The notes beneath the pieces are model-generated. The model was not told the DNA's origin and ran no database searches. It was given only the letters and a program-made list of their open reading frames with translations. A DNA stretch of 64,000 nt from Podarcis muralis (taxonomy: Eukaryota), in contig NC_135668.1 in assembly GCF_964188315.1 (NCBI RefSeq), positions 41,416,001 through 41,480,000 on the forward strand, read 5' to 3'. The translations under genes and the position numbers were made by a program. Within the stretch, counting starts at the first letter, position 1. Each line of letters starts with the position of its first letter. Of the stretch, positions 25,579 through 63,873 are shown in pieces.

Positions 25579-25708
25579 NNNNNNNNNNNNNNNNNNNNNN
25601 NNNNNNNNNNNNNNNNNNNNNNNNNNNNNNNNNNNNNNNNNNNNNNNNNNNNNNNNNNNNNNNNNNNNNNNNNNNNNNNNNNNNNNNNNNNNNNNNNNNN
25701 NNNNNNNN
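25579..25708. other. Assembly gap (130 N)
   Basis: Run of N. Confidence 1.
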
Positions 25709-51281: not shown

Positions 51282-53409
51282 CTAACATGTATCAGTTTTC
51301 TTTCTTCAAATGGTGGCTCACTGGATTGCGTCGGGATGTTGGAAGCAGCACAAAACATAGGGAGCTAATTAAAAGAGTAATCAAAACACACTTTCTAAAC
51401 AAATGTAAGGATATTACACCATAGATAACAAACAGCATGTATTATCTGCTGTTACGGTGTGGCCACTCCAATTGCAAATAAATCGTTTAGTTCACTGGCC
51501 AGTTAAAGCTACAAGCTTTAATTCCCAAGACAAAGCAAGTTAAGAACAATTCTGCTCTTAAGTTTTGGATAAGGGTAGTAAGTTGATATAATAGCCTCAG
51601 TAACTGCCTACAGAAAGGGGTGACTGTCACAGTGAATAAGTAGCAAGTACTGAATTGCAAGGGCACTACATTGTGTGTATTTCCAGAAAAAAATAACTGC
51701 AACTGTTGAATTCTTTTCAAAGAGCTCTAACAACCCAAAATCATAAAAAGTGTAGATTCAGCGCAGCCTTGCAAACAAGTTCACAAGGTACTAAGCTCAA
51801 ATGCTTACACAGTTACATCTGGTACAGTAGAAGTTTAAACACAAAAAGGATTAATTGCCTCCAATTCATAAGAACTGCCCAGGTTGGATGCTCTGAAGGC
51901 TATTCTTACTTAGGAGTTGCAATCAGGAGAGTATTTGCCCAGTGCTGTTCATACACACATGCCCCCTAGTGCAGCACACACAAACACTTCAAAATTTAAG
52001 AGCTGCTTATGAATGAAACAAGATGGTTTTGGGAGACTGTAATAGCTTTTTTGTGCGCAATTATCAGGCACTCATTGGGACTACATTAAGCTACCCTGCA
52101 TCAAGACACAGAGACTAGATTGGGCATATCTTCAAAGTCTGTGTTATTATTCTTTTTTAAGTCACATTTCCCCCTAGAAAGACCTTTAACAGATTATGTA
52201 GTTGCCATGACTACATGGGGGTGAAGAGTAGAGTCCCTTTGTACTCAAAGGGACACATATATTATACTTTGCATTTTCAGAAAAGAAGTCTTATACTGCC
52301 TCTGGGGTTCTAGTCCAAGCAAAGCCCTGAAGAATTATATTCCTTAGCCAGAAAAACACAGACATTGCCAGGATTCCTTAATTTGGGTTAAAACAATTAT
52401 CATATTTTGACACCTTGAACAAAGTCATATATTCATGTTAAGGACAAGGAGCAACAATGTTCAGGGGCACTATTGAATGCCAGTTGCTGGGGAGTCAAAG
52501 TGAGGGAGGCCCATTGCCCTCAAGACCTGCTTGTGACCATCCCAGAAGCATCTCTGAGAAACAGGGCACTGGACTTCACAACTTTGGTGTGATCAAGCAA
52601 GACTTACACAGCAACTCTTTGAATTATTAACACAGCAAGCAGCTCTGATGTATTTGCAGTAAGAATGCCACAAGAGATGGGCTTTTGTGTCGTCCCCCCA
52701 CACCACTTACAAGTTTAACACAAGCTCGTGAGTGCAATACTTTCCCGAAGCCAACGATCCCCAAAAGGAAAGAGTTATATTGTAAGCACTTGGTAAGGCA
52801 AACTACCCGCTCCAGCAACTGGAATGCATGAGAAGCTGAGGGCCCCAAACTTTGCTGCCCCAGTGAAGCATCCAGCGATCCGGGACGACCCGGAGCTGAA
52901 TGCCACCCATGTCGGCCAGCTATATCGCAGCAGCCTGCAAGCCACCCCCGCCCAAGCTGGTGCAGGCGCCCATGCCTCGCGAGGACCTAAAATGCAACCA
53001 CGAGGGGCACATGGAAGCTCCACTACGTGCCCTGGGGCTTACACGCATGTAAAGTAAGTTGCAGCCCGAGCGCGTGAACACGCAGCCGTGCCCGGCGTTC
53101 TTCGCCCAGCAAGGCACCTTCTGCCTGCCGGTCAAGGCCTCCCCGGTCAGGCACAGCCCGCCAGCCCAGCCCTTCCTCCACTCAAAGCCCCAGACCAAGG
53201 CATTCCTCTCCCAACCGCTCTCCCCCCCCCCCGGCTCCGTTCAGGCGGCCGCCGCGAGGCCCAGGAGAAGCGCGGTCATCTCCAAATAAGCTGCGCAGGT
53301 CGAGCGGAGCCCCAGCTTCCAGGAACCGGGTCGACAGCGGCCCAAGGAGACAGGATGGGTTCGATATACGACGGATGCCACCCAGGAACGGCCATCACCC
53401 GCTACTCAC

Positions 53410-53434
53410 CAGTGCAGCAATATGGCGGAAAAAG
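53410..53434 (-). other. RPS15A: RPS15A non-coding exon 1 with 5'TOP (TSS ~53434)
   Basis: CTTTTTCCGCCATATTGCTGCACTG|gtgagt; TCT initiator match; YY1 motif AATATGGCGG 53419-53428. Confidence 0.85.
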
Positions 53435-53508
53435 GAAGGCGGCCGGGCGAGCGCGGGGTGTTATGGGAAATCGAGGCGGCAGGATAACAAGGAAGTGGCG
53501 GGGGTTTC

Positions 53509-53518
53509 TCTCGCGAGA
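53509..53518. promoter_or_regulatory. TCTCGCGAGA (CGCG element) palindrome
   Basis: Exact motif ~75 bp upstream of the TSS; ETS site GGAAGTG at ~53491. Confidence 0.8.
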
Positions 53519-53624
53519 TTACCTTGTTCCCGGGTTAAAATGCCTCGGGGAGATTTACGCTCAGCCAGTGCTCGTCAACGGCTACGCTGTGGACCGTAGA
53601 GAACAAAATGTAGAGATATCTTGT

Positions 53625-53884
53625 CAAAACAAAAAAAATTCCTTCCAGTAGCACCTTAAAGACCAACTAAGTTAGTTCTTGGTATGAGCTTTCGTGTGCA
53701 TGCACACTTCTGCACACGAAAGCTCATACCAAGAACTAACTTAGTTGGTCTCGTATCTGAAGAAGTGTGCATGCACACGAAAGCTCATACCAAGAACTAA
53801 CTTAGTTGGTCTTTAAGGTGCTACTGGAAGGAATTTTTTTTGTTTTGACTATGGCAGACCAACACGGCTACCCATCTGTAACTG
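53625..53884. mobile_element. Penelope-like palindromic insertion (PLE-2) upstream of RPS15A
   Basis: 88-bp perfect arms 53623-53710 / 53762-53849, partial tandem copy in the spacer, 12-bp TSD GAGATATCTTGT (53613-53624, 53885-53896). Confidence 0.87.
53753..53790 (+). ncRNA. Minimal type I hammerhead ribozyme motif
   Basis: Identical to the 41424-41461 motif; core CTGAAGA 53757-53763, GAAA 53779-53782, predicted cleavage after C53786. Confidence 0.8.
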
Positions 53885-54289
53885 GAGATATCTTGTGTTA
53901 AGGCTGAATCGACACAAAGGGCTCAATTTTCTGATCTTTTAGGATGCGATCTTCTGCGTACTCATTTGGGAGCAAACCTGTTGAAATCACTGGGACGTCG
54001 CTTTGAGTAGATAGCTGCAGTGCTCAGAATGTCTTTGAGCTGGATTTTCCCAGGATTTTTTTAATTTTTTGGCAGCAGCTTCTCCACTCAGAAACGGAAA
54101 GAATCCGCAAACCTATGCATGCCACATTTGAGGGGAATTCTTAAAAATAAAATTTTGGAAGCAGAAAACATTTTAAAGTGCAACATGTCTGCATGCAAGT
54201 CAATGAAGCGCAAGACTTCTGTGTTCAACGGACCGCTGGATTCAGGCTTGATCTCTCGATAAATTTTACATAGGTGATTATATGAGTTA

Positions 54290-54550
54290 GAAAAAGTACT
54301 TCCGCCAAGATTTCTCAACGGCAGCTACCCGGAAGTTGCCGACACTACATTTTCCTATCTCTGTGGCCTGAAGGCAAGGCGTCTTCAAACAGCTCGGCAG
54401 GAGTTGGCAGAGAGCGGATTCCCAGCCGCCCTTTCGGTTTTGGTATCCAGTAGCAACCAAGAACGCTTCCGGAAAAGGGGCGGGGCCAGGCGACGGTTTG
54501 TCGGTGCTCAGCCTGTTTCTGTCACTGCGCGGCAGGACTCCGTCGCATGA
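54290..54550. promoter_or_regulatory. Second CpG-rich promoter-like module
   Basis: ETS motifs (54298, 54329, 54467), GC box 54477-54486, ZNF143/SBS-like ACTACATTTTCC 54344-54355. Confidence 0.55.
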
Positions 54551-54827
54551 ATTCATTCTACTGTATACGCACTACACGTTTTATCCCGTTTCCTCCAGGC
54601 CACACACACGCGAGTTGCTCCAAGGCACCATATAGGGATCTTCCCTTTCCTCCATTTTACTCTCACAGCCACCTTAAGTGAGATAGGCTAGGGCACAGTC
54701 CATAGCTGTCAACTTTTCCCTTTTCTTGCGAGGAATCCTATTCGGAATAAGGGAAATTCCCTTTAAAAAAGGGAGACGTTGACAGCTATGGCAGAGTCCC
54801 CCAACCTTGGGTTCCTCAGGTACCGTA

Positions 54828-58774: not shown

Positions 58775-58893
58775 TCATTCGTTTTTCTTCTCCTTTTGCT
58801 TCAGGAGTTTGTTGACCTCCCTTTTTGCCATTCCAGCATATTTTGAAATTATTCCGTGCTTGTTTAACCCAGGAAACAACAAGAAGCAGCTCA
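58775..58893 (-). CDS. ARL6IP1: ARL6IP1 exon 6
   Basis: cccctag|(V)SCFLLFPGLNKHGIISKYAGMAKREVNKLLKQKEKKNE*; 119 nt. Confidence 0.96.
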
Positions 58894-59067
58894 CTAGGGG
58901 AGTAAAGAAGAAGTTATCACCAACTATGTTCATTTGCAAATTCATCCCCCATACCGACTCATCTAATTTATGTTGCAATCGCTTCATTATAGGCATCCCA
59001 ACTACAAATATCTCCCCCATTCTCTACTGTGGAAAAATACAGCAATATATTATTCTGCACCACTTAC

Positions 59068-60911: not shown

Positions 60912-61396
60912 CTGTTGGGGCAAGAAAAATGTTGTTATCTAGCGGCAAAACATTTAACAATGTGATTAAAGGAGGTGTGGAGAAGCAGCAGCCTCCAAAT
61001 TTTATTTTGAAGTACCCAACTCCCATCAGCCCCAGCCAACATAGCCAGTGGTTGAGAAATAACGCCTCAATTTAGTTTCTGCAATGGCATAATCACAACA
61101 ATGGGAGAGTAGGTTGGAAGGAGAGAGAAAATGGAAGTTTGGAAGGAATAAAAAGTTGTTGCTCTTCCCTATCATTTCCAGTTAATAGGCCCTTCTATGA
61201 AATAAAATGAATAGGAATGCCCCCAAGTTTGAACATATATTTGGTTTGTTTATAGCAGCATTGTTTTTCCAGCTGCATAAAACTTCCCATGTACTTTTTA
61301 TACAGCAGAGCAGTACTGAGAATTTCAGGAAAGTAACTACTAGCTTAACTGTCTTTAGCATTATTATTTTTTGTAACTTTCTCTCCAATAACTTAC

Positions 61397-61530
61397 AGAA
61401 AGATGAAGGAAACTACAGCAATCATAGCAGGTGGAAACCATGGTTTTTCCCAACGAAGGATTTTGTCTGTCACCAGAATCACTTCACCCCATCCTTGCAA
61501 CTGCTCTTCCAAGCTAGCTGTCTCTGCAGC
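61397..61530 (-). CDS. ARL6IP1: ARL6IP1 exon 2 (exon 1 beyond window)
   Basis: cacag|AAETASLEEQLQGWGEVILVTDKILRWEKPWFPPAMIAVVSFIFL|gtaagt; 134 nt. Confidence 0.96.
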
Positions 61531-63873
61531 CTGTGAATAAAAGCATTTTAACATATGCAATTGCCCCAGGCAGAAAAATGCTTACACAATGCATATGCTT
61601 CATTGGACATGTAGGCTATCTTATGTTAGACAATATAACAGCTTTATCCTTACTTTGCTTTACAGAATATAACTCAGTTTTTTATGTCTGCATCCTCTTA
61701 ACTGGTCCTTTTAATTTGAAGCTTTATGTCTATCATGCAACAAAATATCTGGTTACTCCCAACTAGGAGAACAGTGCCATATTCCTAGGATATATTTCTA
61801 CATACTGAAACTTCAACCCAGAATTCCCATGAGCAGAACAGGATGCTCTGGCTAGAGCAAAAGGGTTGTGGATGCAATTTACACCAATTCTTCCTTCCTC
61901 CTGCAGCGAATGAAAAGCTGCTCTAGAGGTTTGGGGATTCCTTAAGGTCAGAGGGGAAAGGGGAAATTGACAGAAATTGTCTTTCCCACATTCCTCAAGC
62001 AGGACCCTCTTCTAGAACCACAATGTTAACTCTAGATCCAGTAGTTAGGATTTTTCATAACAAAGAGCTATTCTACCTGCCATTTATTGTTATGGCACCA
62101 TTCTGTGAAAACTGCTCCAGGACCTTATTTTGAGACTTGTTCTGATTCCAGCTTGGATATTAGGATAAAATTTATCTGGCTTATGGAGAACCCAAATCTT
62201 ATGATCTTGAACTTGGGCAGCATGAGAAAGTAACTCAATATAAACAAAATATTTAATGTCTTTTTTTTGCAAGCAATATATATTTGAAATTAAACTGTTT
62301 TTACATTATTTATTATCCTAACAGTGTTAAATGTTATGCAAGGTTCTGTGTGCAAAACTGAATTTACCAAAATTTTAATTAACTCTGAATAACTGTTACT
62401 TTGGACATCCTACACAGCTGTGTTTTGTACTGGCTGCTGTCTCAGCCCAGGACCATAAACTGAAGATTTGTGAATAGTACGTAGGTGAAACTTTCATAAT
62501 GAACCATGAAGGGGGTGGGGGGGGAGAGAGAGACCTGCCACTGAGGTCTACACACTGTATAAAACTCCTCCTAGTCTAGCATGTTTAATGCTTCCTTATT
62601 TTGAATTCTAATTTCTGTTCTTCAATTTCTGTCCATTTCCTAACATGGCCTTCTAGATCAGCAAGATATAGCGAGTTCTAGCCAATAAATTTTGTTTCTA
62701 AACATTTCTCTCTTCCCTTGAAGCTTAGATCTGTGAATATTCCATCGCGCACACACAAACCCTTAACTCATGTCTTTGAAATGATTCAGTCACAAGACAA
62801 ACTAAACTGTTGTTCTGCCTGGGTTAAAATCTCTCCTTCCCATCAAGTTCACTCAAGTTATATTGGGCCATCTATGCGCACACAGCCTCAGTGGCTGCAT
62901 AGGGCCATTATAAAACAGGGGGAGACTCAAGTGCACTGTCTTCAACTCAAAAAGCAGGGTATACTAAGCATATGACATAGTGAAAAATGTAGCAGATAAC
63001 ACTGTGGATACAAATGATCTGCATTTCAAACTCAAAGAAAAGGCACACACAGTATCTGCGCTCCTCTGTTCATCAACCATAATGCTCAGTGCTGTGCACC
63101 TGACTTTCAACCACCTATCCCTGAAGCGCTGCAGCTCCTTTGACAGCCTAAACAAAGCACCCTGCTTATTTCTGCTCCTATTAGCATAAGCAGGCTGGCC
63201 AGGTGTGTCTCTAATACTACAAAGGAAGATGACATAGCAGAGTCCTACTGGAGAAACCGGAAAATGAAACCTGATCTTTTTCAAGATGGCTTGCCTAGAA
63301 TATTTTTTAATGTATTATTTGGTGGGAAGAAAAGCCTCCATCCCTACCCATTTATAAGGAGGCTATTTTGCCTTTCAGCTCTCCAATTCTGATCCCATGT
63401 TCCTACAAAACACTACTGCTGCCTCTGCCAGCTTCTAAAACCTTGTGCATCAGCAAAATATAATGGGTTCTCTCCTGATTTTGGATCCTTCCACAGCTCT
63501 CAAAAGGCGAAATTTGAGGTGACATATTTACCTTGGAATAAACCCAATTTACTCAGGCCTTCATTCTGAGTAAACATGACTAGACCATGGGGTGTTATTT
63601 AAGTTCCAGAAGGACAGTTTCATACAGCCAACACACAAACAACCTTGGGGCACCTTTAAGGCTTATGGTGGCAGAAGCTTCACAGGCTAAAACCCCATTA
63701 ATCAAACGCACAAAATGTTATTATCCATCCGTATGTGTGTGTATATATAAACACACACACACTTATCTATTTACACACAGGTGAGTGTTAATACAAATAT
63801 GCACATACTGATAGGTAACAACGTGTGTGTGAAAGAAGACATTCATACACACACCATCAAACAACCACTTCGT

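What the first reader, a model, noticed from the sequence alone, without database searches (positions are those of the whole stretch)
53625..53884. PLE-2: hammerhead-bearing 88-bp palindrome inserted ~190 bp upstream of the RPS15A TSS
Seen: 260-bp insertion with 12-bp TSD at the edge of the CpG island, separating the core promoter from the module at 54290-54550. Its structure is inverted arm + partial tandem copy + full unit. Inference: a tolerated young insertion in a housekeeping promoter that may extrude a cruciform under transcriptional supercoiling, attract silencing, or be transcribed divergently.
Basis: partly seen in the sequence, partly recalled or inferred. Interest (0 to 1): 0.7.

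Follow-up and report, generated by a model that had tools for sequence, protein, structure and literature searches.

The report
Young Penelope-type insertion upstream of RPS15A
A 260-base piece of a very abundant lizard jumping gene (a Penelope-like element carrying a small hammerhead ribozyme motif) landed about 186 bases upstream of the ribosomal protein gene RPS15A so recently that two other animals of the species still carry the empty site; it is an ordinary young transposon insertion, and nothing shows that it changes the gene.

Summary
Window 53625-53884 is a 260-bp insertion flanked by a perfect 12-bp target-site duplication. It lies at the upstream edge of the RPS15A CpG island, about 186 bp from the predicted TSS. 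It is built of an inverted arm, a 41-nt partial direct copy and a full 133-nt unit.

This is the textbook layout of a Penelope-like element (PLE) insertion: strong 5' truncation, a partial tandem, an inverted truncated copy, and a 35-37-nt tail at one end only. The + strand carries one complete PLE-type minimal hammerhead motif. Rfam does not recognise it.

New here: DNA contigs from two other animals (two studies) run straight from 53612 to 53885. They carry the empty site, so the insertion is polymorphic and very young. The family is extremely abundant and has two alternative 3' ends, as published for the Anolis PLE.

Cruciform extrusion, silencing and divergent transcription remain untested. 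The recognisable core promoter motifs lie between the insertion and the TSS. As RNA, the insert would fold into a roughly 99-bp hairpin that buries the ribozyme.

The scan has already found and followed up the same kind of head-to-head PLE palindrome elsewhere in this genome (s1-152546). Verdict: a new member of a known kind, of low interest.

The parts
53613..53624 (.). Left copy of the 12-bp target-site duplication GAGATATCTTGT. Its last 2 nt (GT) also match the element (microhomology).
53625..53711 (-). Inverted, 5'-truncated, tail-less copy of the unit (unit positions 10-96). It ends at the tail-less 3' end (...GTTTTG) and lacks the CUGA of the hammerhead core.
   Evidence: 87/87 complementary to 53761-53847; same outer end as the second copy at 41366.
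53711..53751 (+). 41-nt partial direct copy (unit positions 21-61). It contains a second GAAAGCUC site at 53718-53725 and forms a 41-bp hairpin with the left arm across a 10-nt loop.
   Evidence: D1, I2; DNA fold -49.4 kcal/mol, z -17.7
53753..53884 (+). Full 'leader' unit of the Penelope-type element. Its 5' end at G53753 is a recurrent breakpoint genome-wide.
   Evidence: tables 5 and 7
53753..53790 (+). Minimal hammerhead motif. Helix I is GUAU (53753-56) with AUAC (53787-90). The core CUGAAGA is at 53757-63, followed by an extra A at 53764. Helix II is the palindrome GUGUGCAUGCACAC (53765-78). GAA is at 53779-81 and A15.1-G-C-U16.1 at 53782-85. C17 is 53786, so the predicted cut lies at 53786|53787.
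   Evidence: motif; isolated unit folds into helix I plus helix II; published descriptor features
53848..53884 (+). 35-37-nt 'tail', present only at the right end. It is AC-rich (CAGACCAACACGG) and pairs with GUUGGUCU at 53805-53812 in the fold of the unit.
   Evidence: table 7: loose ends of other copies cluster at 53845-53850 and 53879-53884.
53885..53896 (.). Right copy of the 12-bp target-site duplication.
   Evidence: In runs X3 and X10 one contig joins 53612 directly to 53885 (table 8).
53407..53439 (-). Predicted RPS15A exon 1 (5' UTR). It has a TOP-like start CCTTCCTTTTTCC and the donor CTG|GTGAGT.
   Evidence: Read from sequence. Coding exons confirmed. RNA reads stop at about 53431 (table 2).
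53491..53518 (.). Core promoter motifs between the insertion and the TSS: ETS-like GGAAGT at 53491 and the palindrome TCTCGCGAGA at 53509-53518. A YY1-like ATATGGCG lies at 53420, outside this range.
41366..41578 (.). Second copy of the same family ('PLE-1'). It shares both outer ends but has a different central junction, and its complete hammerhead core is on the minus strand (CUGA at 41457).

Best explanation
The 260 bp are one recent retrotransposition product of a very abundant Penelope-like element (PLE) family of this lizard. Only the roughly 133-nt hammerhead-bearing 'leader', which forms the 3' end of every PLE insertion, was copied.

Inferred mechanism:
1. The PLE GIY-YIG endonuclease cut both strands of an AT-rich target 12 bp apart.
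2. The bottom-strand end primed reverse transcription at the distal start site, so this copy carries the tail.
3. The top-strand end primed at the proximal start site, using a 2-nt GT/AC microhomology, so this copy has no tail.
4. One cDNA ran to the RNA 5' end at G53753, added one nucleotide and jumped to a second template, which gave the 41-nt partial copy.
5. The two cDNAs were joined head to head next to the self-complementary helix II.

The result is a passenger insertion. Its hammerhead motif is a relic of the element's own biology. In any read-through RNA it would be locked in a roughly 99-bp hairpin. The RPS15A core promoter (ETS, TCTCGCGAGA and YY1-like motifs plus the TOP start) lies intact between the insertion and the gene.

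Shown: the insertion, the TSD, the architecture, the motif, the polymorphism, the family abundance and the two classes of 3' end. Inferred: the order of priming and jumping events, and the absence of an effect on RPS15A.
For: - Perfect 12-bp TSD and exact anatomy.
- The empty site with a single TSD copy lies in one contig each of X3 (3241 nt) and X10 (3225 nt), from two studies. Record coordinates are contiguous across 53612|53885 (table 8).
- The arms are 87/87 identical. The copy at 41366-41578 is identical except for 1 nt and the centre, and has the same outer ends.
- Summed contig depth on the element is 4e5-7e5, against 10.6-11.9 on the flanks. Loose ends of other copies cluster at 53753, 53845-53850 and 53879-53884.
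- Literature on PLE insertions: 5' truncation, partial tandem, an adjacent inverted 5'-truncated copy and a 30-40-bp tail at one end (PMC8557442).
- The Anolis PLE protein cuts and extends both strands. It starts RT at two internal sites with the tail between them, in an AC-rich stem-loop, and prefers AT-rich targets (PMC11167929).
- The min-HHR features are met: extra nucleotide between A9 and G10.1, G10.1-C11.1, palindromic 15.2-16.2, and a short helix I (PMC4209133; motif; fold).
- Hairpin fold of the whole insert: -181.9 kcal/mol, z -24.6.
- Polymorphic Penelope insertions are common in lizard populations (PMC7561263).
Against: - No reverse-transcriptase ORF is linked to this unit in the window. 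The PLE assignment rests on architecture and on earlier notes of this scan.
- There is no sequence match to the published Anolis PAc hammerhead region.
- Rfam hammerhead models give no hit even at E<=10.
- I did not see reads of the insertion allele itself. The only two animals laid carry the empty site, and the 0.91 word share of X1/X2 does not prove the junctions.
- The double-priming order of events is a model. A single-cDNA snap-back is not excluded for this copy.
- The lack of effect on RPS15A is untested.
Confidence: 0.8

Rival explanations
1. The insertion is a functional cis-regulatory variant of RPS15A. The inverted repeat extrudes a cruciform, or yields hairpin RNA that attracts silencing, or it separates the core promoter from an upstream module, and so lowers or alters expression.
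For: - It sits about 186 bp upstream of the TSS, at the CpG-island edge.
- It has perfect 87-bp arms, and 41-bp arms with only a 10-nt spacer.
- The predicted hairpin is very stable.
- Contigs of X15 (guessed to be RNA) cover 53903-54521, so some transcript may end or start within about 20 nt of the site.
- It is absent from 2 of 2 other animals, which fits a mildly deleterious allele as well as a young one.
Against: - No expression, methylation or structure data exist for the carrier allele.
- The stranded RNA run X23 shows 0 reads in the unique upstream flanks.
- The recognisable promoter motifs all lie proximal to the insertion.
- Tens of thousands of similar copies exist in the genome, and polymorphic Penelope insertions are common.
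Confidence: 0.1
2. The inverted arm arose by snap-back of a single cDNA at the palindromic helix II, which then primed on itself. It did not arise by a second, independent priming event on the other DNA strand.
For: - The 14-nt helix II is self-complementary (duplex -25.2 kcal/mol).
- The central junctions of both window copies, and of several other genomic copies, lie in or next to it (joints from 53702-53709).
Against: - A snap-back copy should run back through the tail to the start of the cDNA. Instead both window copies end the inverted arm at the same tail-less position, which is also a common 3' end genome-wide.
- Many other copies have arm junctions far from helix II (53647-53673; table 5).
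- The PLE protein extends both strands in vitro.
Confidence: 0.15
3. It is a DNA transposon of the foldback or MITE type with long terminal inverted repeats, not a retroelement.
For: Long perfect inverted repeat and a TSD.
Against: - The ends are asymmetric: a 35-37-nt tail on one side only.
- There is an internal partial tandem copy.
- The centres differ between copies that share the same ends.
- Other genomic copies have variable 5' truncation and extra nucleotides at their junctions (tables 5, 5c).
- The hammerhead motif and the whole layout match PLEs.
Confidence: 0.03
4. It is an assembly artefact: a repeat wrongly placed in the source assembly.
For: - I laid no read of the insertion allele.
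- Palindromic PLE insertions are known to trouble assemblies.
Against: - A misplaced repeat does not create a perfect 12-bp duplication of the very sequence that is single-copy in the empty allele.
- The word share of the likely source runs X1/X2 is 0.91, against 0.61-0.74 elsewhere. This alone is weak evidence.
Confidence: 0.03

Closest known systems
Penelope-like element insertions with an inverted 5'-truncated copy, a partial tandem (pLTR) and a 30-40-bp tail (Evgen'ev & Arkhipova 2005; Craig et al. 2021, PMC8557442)
   Same: Strong 5' truncation, a partial tandem copy, an adjacent inverted truncated copy, a tail at one end only (35-37 nt), a variable-length TSD, and a hammerhead motif in the repeated part.
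   Different: The insertion is only 260 bp and has no ORF. A link to an autonomous element of this genome was not tested here.
PAc (Poseidon of Anolis carolinensis) in vitro system (PMC11167929)
   Same: There are two alternative 3' ends with the tail between them, and an AC-rich stem-loop at the start region. The target is AT-rich. Synthesis from both strand ends would explain the head-to-head product.
   Different: No sequence similarity to the PAc hammerhead region was found. In PAc the ORF starts in stem II and the cut lies 26 nt downstream. Here an ATG in the helix II loop opens only a 9-codon frame.
Minimal hammerhead ribozymes of PLEs (Cervera & de la Pena 2014, PMC4209133)
   Same: CUGANGA and GAAA cores, an extra nucleotide between A9 and G10.1, G10.1-C11.1, a long helix II, a 4-bp helix I, no helix III loop, and a palindromic AGCU around 15.2-16.2. 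Motif pairs on opposite strands 100-700 bp apart were already noted there.
   Different: Activity was not tested. Only one complete core is present at this locus, and it is buried in a long hairpin.
Twin priming of human L1 (Ostertag & Kazazian 2001; recalled from knowledge)
   Same: Both ends of a staggered break prime reverse transcription, giving an inverted 5' segment.
   Different: In L1 the second priming is internal on the same RNA and gives an inversion with deletion. Here both arms start at defined element-specific 3' sites.

Membership tests
Penelope-like element (PLE) insertion | Flanking target-site duplication of variable length | tested here: met
   Perfect 12-bp TSD. The second copy has an 8-13-bp TSD.
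Penelope-like element (PLE) insertion | Partial tandem copy and/or an adjacent inverted 5'-truncated copy | tested here: met
   Inverted arm 53625-53711 and partial direct copy 53711-53751. Layout as in PMC8557442.
Penelope-like element (PLE) insertion | 30-40-bp tail present at one end only; two alternative 3' ends in the family | tested here: met
   35-37-nt tail at the right end only. Loose ends of other copies lie at 53845-50 and 53879-84.
Penelope-like element (PLE) insertion | Derived from, or mobilised by, an element encoding a PLE reverse transcriptase with GIY-YIG endonuclease | not tested
   There is no RT ORF in or near the insert, and the host genome outside the window cannot be searched with these tools. 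Earlier notes of the scan (s1-152546, s1-152566) report such elements in this genome; I did not check them.
Hammerhead ribozyme, PLE minimal type (min-HHR) | Conserved core C3-U4-G5-A6-N7-G8-A9 and G12-A13-A14, A15.1-U16.1, H17 | tested here: met
   CUGAAGA at 53757-63, GAA at 53779-81, A53782...U53785, C53786.
Hammerhead ribozyme, PLE minimal type (min-HHR) | Extra nucleotide between 9 and 10.1, a G10.1-C11.1 pair, long helix II, short helix I, palindromic 15.2-16.2 without loop 3 | tested here: met
   A53764. G53765-C53778. 5-6 bp helix II. GUAU/AUAC. AGCU. Features as listed in PMC4209133.
Hammerhead ribozyme, PLE minimal type (min-HHR) | Self-cleavage (as a dimer or protein-assisted) | not testable with these tools
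   No assay was possible. Published PLE min-HHRs cleave weakly and only as dimers or with protein. In the whole insert the motif is locked in a -182 kcal/mol hairpin.
Rfam hammerhead families (Hammerhead_1, _3, _II, HH9, HH10) | Score at or above the family's gathering threshold | tested here: not met
   No hammerhead hit at gathering, nor at E<=10 on 701 nt or on 89 nt. This is expected for a motif without helix III. The miRNA hits are generic hairpin matches below threshold.
Retrozyme (non-LTR, circRNA-forming tandem HHR element) | Two or more complete hammerheads in tandem delimiting a unit that is excised and circularised | tested here: not met
   There is only one complete core on the + strand. 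The upstream partial copy lacks CUGANGA. There is no evidence of circular RNA.

The most novel reading that the evidence does not exclude
The self-complementary helix II of the PLE hammerhead may act at the DNA level. On this reading it is the preferred place where two like-sense cDNAs, primed from both ends of the staggered break, anneal and are joined. The ribozyme stem would then help to create the head-to-head insertions typical of PLEs. At this locus the resulting hairpin, placed between the RPS15A TSS and a possible divergent or upstream transcript, would make a natural allele for testing what a long inverted repeat does to a housekeeping promoter.
Probability: 0.1. Interest if true: 0.55.

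Novelty: new member of a known kind. Interest (0 to 1): 0.2.

Why it matters
The locus adds little that is new. It is one more young copy of a known and very abundant element type.

Its practical value is as a segregating natural allele, with and without a 260-bp perfect inverted repeat about 186 bp upstream of an essential, highly expressed ribosomal protein gene. Heterozygous lizards would therefore allow a clean allele-specific test of whether such palindromic retroelement insertions disturb a CpG-island promoter.

The two window copies and the read data also fit the published in vitro picture of PLE integration: two RT start sites, and extension of both strands.

Tried and rejected
- **Rfam.** At gathering and at permissive thresholds there was no hammerhead hit. 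The miRNA-family hits (MIR1222 and others, 16-56 bits against gathering scores of 43-100 bits) are generic long-hairpin matches on both strands, and I rejected them.
- **Metagenome contigs.** An exact search with the 30-nt core found nothing.
- **Anolis PAc supplement.** A search for our core, tail and cut-site words found no related sequence.
- **Findings index.** A look-up by sequence was blank.
- **Upstream ORFs.** Pfam on the two ARL6IP1-like ORFs gave no hit.
- **Retrozyme reading.** Rejected: there is only one complete core.
- **MITE/foldback reading.** Rejected: the ends are asymmetric, there is a tail, and the centres vary between copies.
- **A 61-nt tandem-unit reading of the partial copy.** I considered it and set it aside. 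Long-form copies elsewhere continue upstream of G53753 with a different sequence (...CTTCTGTTTCAGT; table 7), so the partial copy is better explained by a template jump.
- **Word shares of the other runs.** They cannot genotype the insertion, because the element's words occur elsewhere in the genome.

Full report
**What is in the sequence**

The 12-mer GAGATATCTTGT occurs at 53613-53624 and again at 53885-53896, enclosing exactly 260 bp. Only six exact 12-mers recur at 150-400 bp spacing in the whole window, this pair and the element's own internal repeats among them.

The 260 bp consist of the following pieces:
- An inverted arm, 53625-53711. It is the perfect reverse complement of 53761-53847 (87/87). 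Two further bases of the TSD (GT) also match.
- A 41-nt direct partial copy, 53711-53751, identical to 53772-53812.
- One unaligned C at 53752.
- A full unit, 53753-53884.
- The last 35-37 nt of the unit (53848/50-53884), which have no counterpart in the inverted arm.

'88-bp palindrome' is slightly loose. It is an 87-bp inverted repeat with a 49-nt spacer. The left arm also pairs with the partial copy as a 41-bp inverted repeat with a 10-nt spacer (I2; DNA fold -49.4 kcal/mol, z -17.7).

**Gene context**

RPS15A is on the minus strand. They carry the RPS15A peptide, and two reach the Pfam Ribosomal_S8 cut-off.

Exon 1 is read from the sequence as 53439-53407, with a TOP-like CCTTCCTTTTTCC start and the donor CTG|GTGAGT. 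RNA reads of X23 stop at about 53431. The proximal edge of the insertion is therefore about 186 bp upstream.

The CpG island spans about 52700-53600 and its last CpG is at 53595, so the insertion sits about 30 bp beyond its edge. The recognisable promoter motifs all lie between the insertion and the gene or within exon 1: ETS-like GGAAGT at 53491, TCTCGCGAGA at 53509-53518 and YY1-like ATATGGCG at 53420.

The 'module' at 54290-54550 is a second, single-copy CpG-rich block (54200-54620, CpG o/e 0.9-1.0) with ETS and GC-box motifs. Nothing links it to RPS15A.

**The hammerhead**

The + strand has one complete core, with these parts:
- Helix I: GUAU (53753-56) with AUAC (53787-90).
- CUGAAGA at 53757-63.
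- An extra A at 53764.
- Helix II: the palindrome GUGUGCAUGCACAC (53765-78).
- GAA (53779-81), then A-G-C-U (53782-85) and C17 (53786).

These are the traits that Cervera and de la Pena list for the minimal hammerheads of PLEs (PMC4209133). They are a nucleotide between 9 and 10.1, G10.1-C11.1, a long helix II, a 4-5-bp helix I, and palindromic 15.2-16.2 without loop 3.

The isolated unit folds into helix I plus helix II. Rfam's hammerhead models do not score it at any threshold tried, as expected without helix III. The miRNA-family hits are generic hairpin matches below gathering.

The minus-strand copy in the left arm lacks CUGA.

As one RNA the insert with its TSDs folds into a hairpin of about 99 bp (-181.9 kcal/mol, z -24.6) that buries the core. 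Two cores together prefer an intermolecular helix II duplex. Published PLE minimal hammerheads cleave weakly, as dimers or with the element's protein, and cleavage is not needed for insertion in vitro. Catalysis at this locus is therefore unlikely and was not testable.

**What kind of element**

The layout is the one described for PLE insertions in PMC8557442 and PMC8969392. Its features are high 5' truncation, a partial tandem, an inverted 5'-truncated copy at the 5' side, and a 30-40-bp tail at one end.

A second copy in the window (41366-41578) has the same two outer ends. Its inverted arm stops at the same ...GTTTTGA, and its tail differs by 1 nt. Its central junction is different, and its complete hammerhead core is on the other strand.

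**Evidence from public reads**

- *Polymorphism.* In two DNA runs of the same species from two different studies (X3, X10), a single contig of 3.2 kb lies on 53000-53612 and continues without a break at 53885-54600. This is the empty site with one TSD copy. With a 12-bp TSD and 31-mer assembly, such a contig can only come from an allele without the insertion. The insertion is therefore polymorphic. These animals may still be heterozygous, because contigs show presence, not absence.
- *Abundance.* Summed contig depth over the element is 4e5-7e5, against 10.6-11.9 on the flanks. The tool warns that this is no copy number, but the family is plainly very abundant.
- *Recurrent breakpoints.* Other copies break away from this locus at three recurrent places. 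These are before 53753 (the unit's 5' end), behind 53845-53850 (the tail-less 3' end) and behind 53879-53884 (the tailed 3' end).
- *Junctions in other copies.* Many other copies join variably truncated inverted arms directly to 53753, with 0-20 extra letters (tables 5, 5c).

The two 3' ends match the two RT start sites with the tail between them that were shown for the Anolis PLE protein. That protein also cuts and extends both DNA strands, starts in an AC-rich stem-loop and prefers AT-rich targets (PMC11167929). Here the tail is AC-rich and pairs with 53805-53812, and the target is AT-rich.

**Mechanism (inferred)**

1. A staggered double cut 12 bp apart.
2. Bottom-strand priming at the distal start site (tailed copy), and top-strand priming at the proximal site with 2-nt microhomology (tail-less inverted copy).
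3. One cDNA reaches the RNA 5' end at G53753, adds a nucleotide and jumps to a second template, giving the 41-nt partial copy.
4. The two cDNAs are joined at T53711, next to the self-complementary helix II.

A single-cDNA snap-back at helix II is the main alternative. It is disfavoured because the inverted arms of both window copies end at the defined tail-less site rather than running back through the tail.

**Age**

The arms are identical. The two window copies differ by 1 nt outside the centre and share a minority C at 53873, where most genomic copies have T (table 3). The insertion is absent from two other animals. Polymorphic Penelope insertions number in the thousands in Anolis populations (PMC7561263), so this is expected behaviour for an active family.

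None could be tested on the carrier allele. X23 (stranded RNA, 12% of the run read) has no reads in the unique flanks 53432-53593 and 53918-54600. Its reads on the element come from other loci: 98% run on into unlike sequence.

X15, whose kind is only guessed to be RNA, covers the start of the gene (53176-53400) and 53903-54521, but not 53432-53593. If it is RNA, an upstream or divergent transcript ends or starts about 18 nt from the insertion site. Its strand is unknown.

The insertion allele itself was not seen in reads, because my single read-laying run went to non-source animals and RNA. An assembly artefact is very unlikely given the perfect TSD, but it is not formally excluded.

**Earlier work in this scan**

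Notes on this genome call it a wall lizard (Podarcis); I did not verify this. They report over 200 hammerhead observations. One follow-up (s1-152546) concluded that small palindromes of this type are two copies of a roughly 135-base hammerhead-bearing PLE leader inserted head to head. My independent reading agrees.

**Housekeeping**

The N run at 25579-25708 was left untouched.

**Verdict**

It is a real, young, polymorphic PLE-type insertion, a new member of a known kind.

Noticed in passing
window 54200-54620: A second small CpG-rich block (CpG o/e 0.9-1.0) about 800 bp upstream of the RPS15A TSS. It carries ETS (CCGGAAG) and GC-box motifs and is single copy in DNA contigs. It may be a separate promoter.
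   Followed up: partly
window 53903-54521: Contigs of run X15 (kind only guessed as RNA) cover this stretch and the start of RPS15A (53176-53400), but not 53432-53593. This may be an upstream or divergent transcript with one end about 18 nt from the insertion site. Its strand is unknown, and the stranded RNA run X23 shows nothing there.
   Followed up: partly
window 58775-59020 and 61393-61560, minus strand: Two ORFs end in ...GMAKREVNKLLKQKEKKNE* and contain ...AAETASLEEQLQGWGEV.... From memory they resemble ARL6IP1 exons, which would keep the human gene order ARL6IP1-RPS15A. Pfam gave no hit.
   Followed up: partly
window 53753 (unit 5' end); other genomic copies seen: G53753 is a recurrent 5' breakpoint genome-wide. 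It is often preceded by a single extra G at junctions with inverted arms, which could be a cap-copied G marking the TSS of the leader RNA. Long-form copies instead continue upstream with ...CTTCTGTTTCAGT, which looks like a 3' splice site abutting helix I.
   Followed up: no
window 41366-41578: A second head-to-head copy of the same family (PLE-1). It has 81-nt perfect arms 16 nt apart, its complete hammerhead core is on the minus strand, and its TSD is ACTCTTCT(T/C)CA. Its presence in other individuals was not checked.
   Followed up: partly
window 53000-54600: The flanks differ from the two other animals at about 0.9% (X3) and 1.5% (X10) of positions, with several small indels. This points to high diversity or to different populations.
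   Followed up: no
window 53765-53778: Helix II of the hammerhead is a perfect 14-nt palindrome. Cofolding two cores prefers an intermolecular helix II duplex (-32.2 kcal/mol against 2 x -7.6 kcal/mol), which is not the published helix III dimer.
   Followed up: partly
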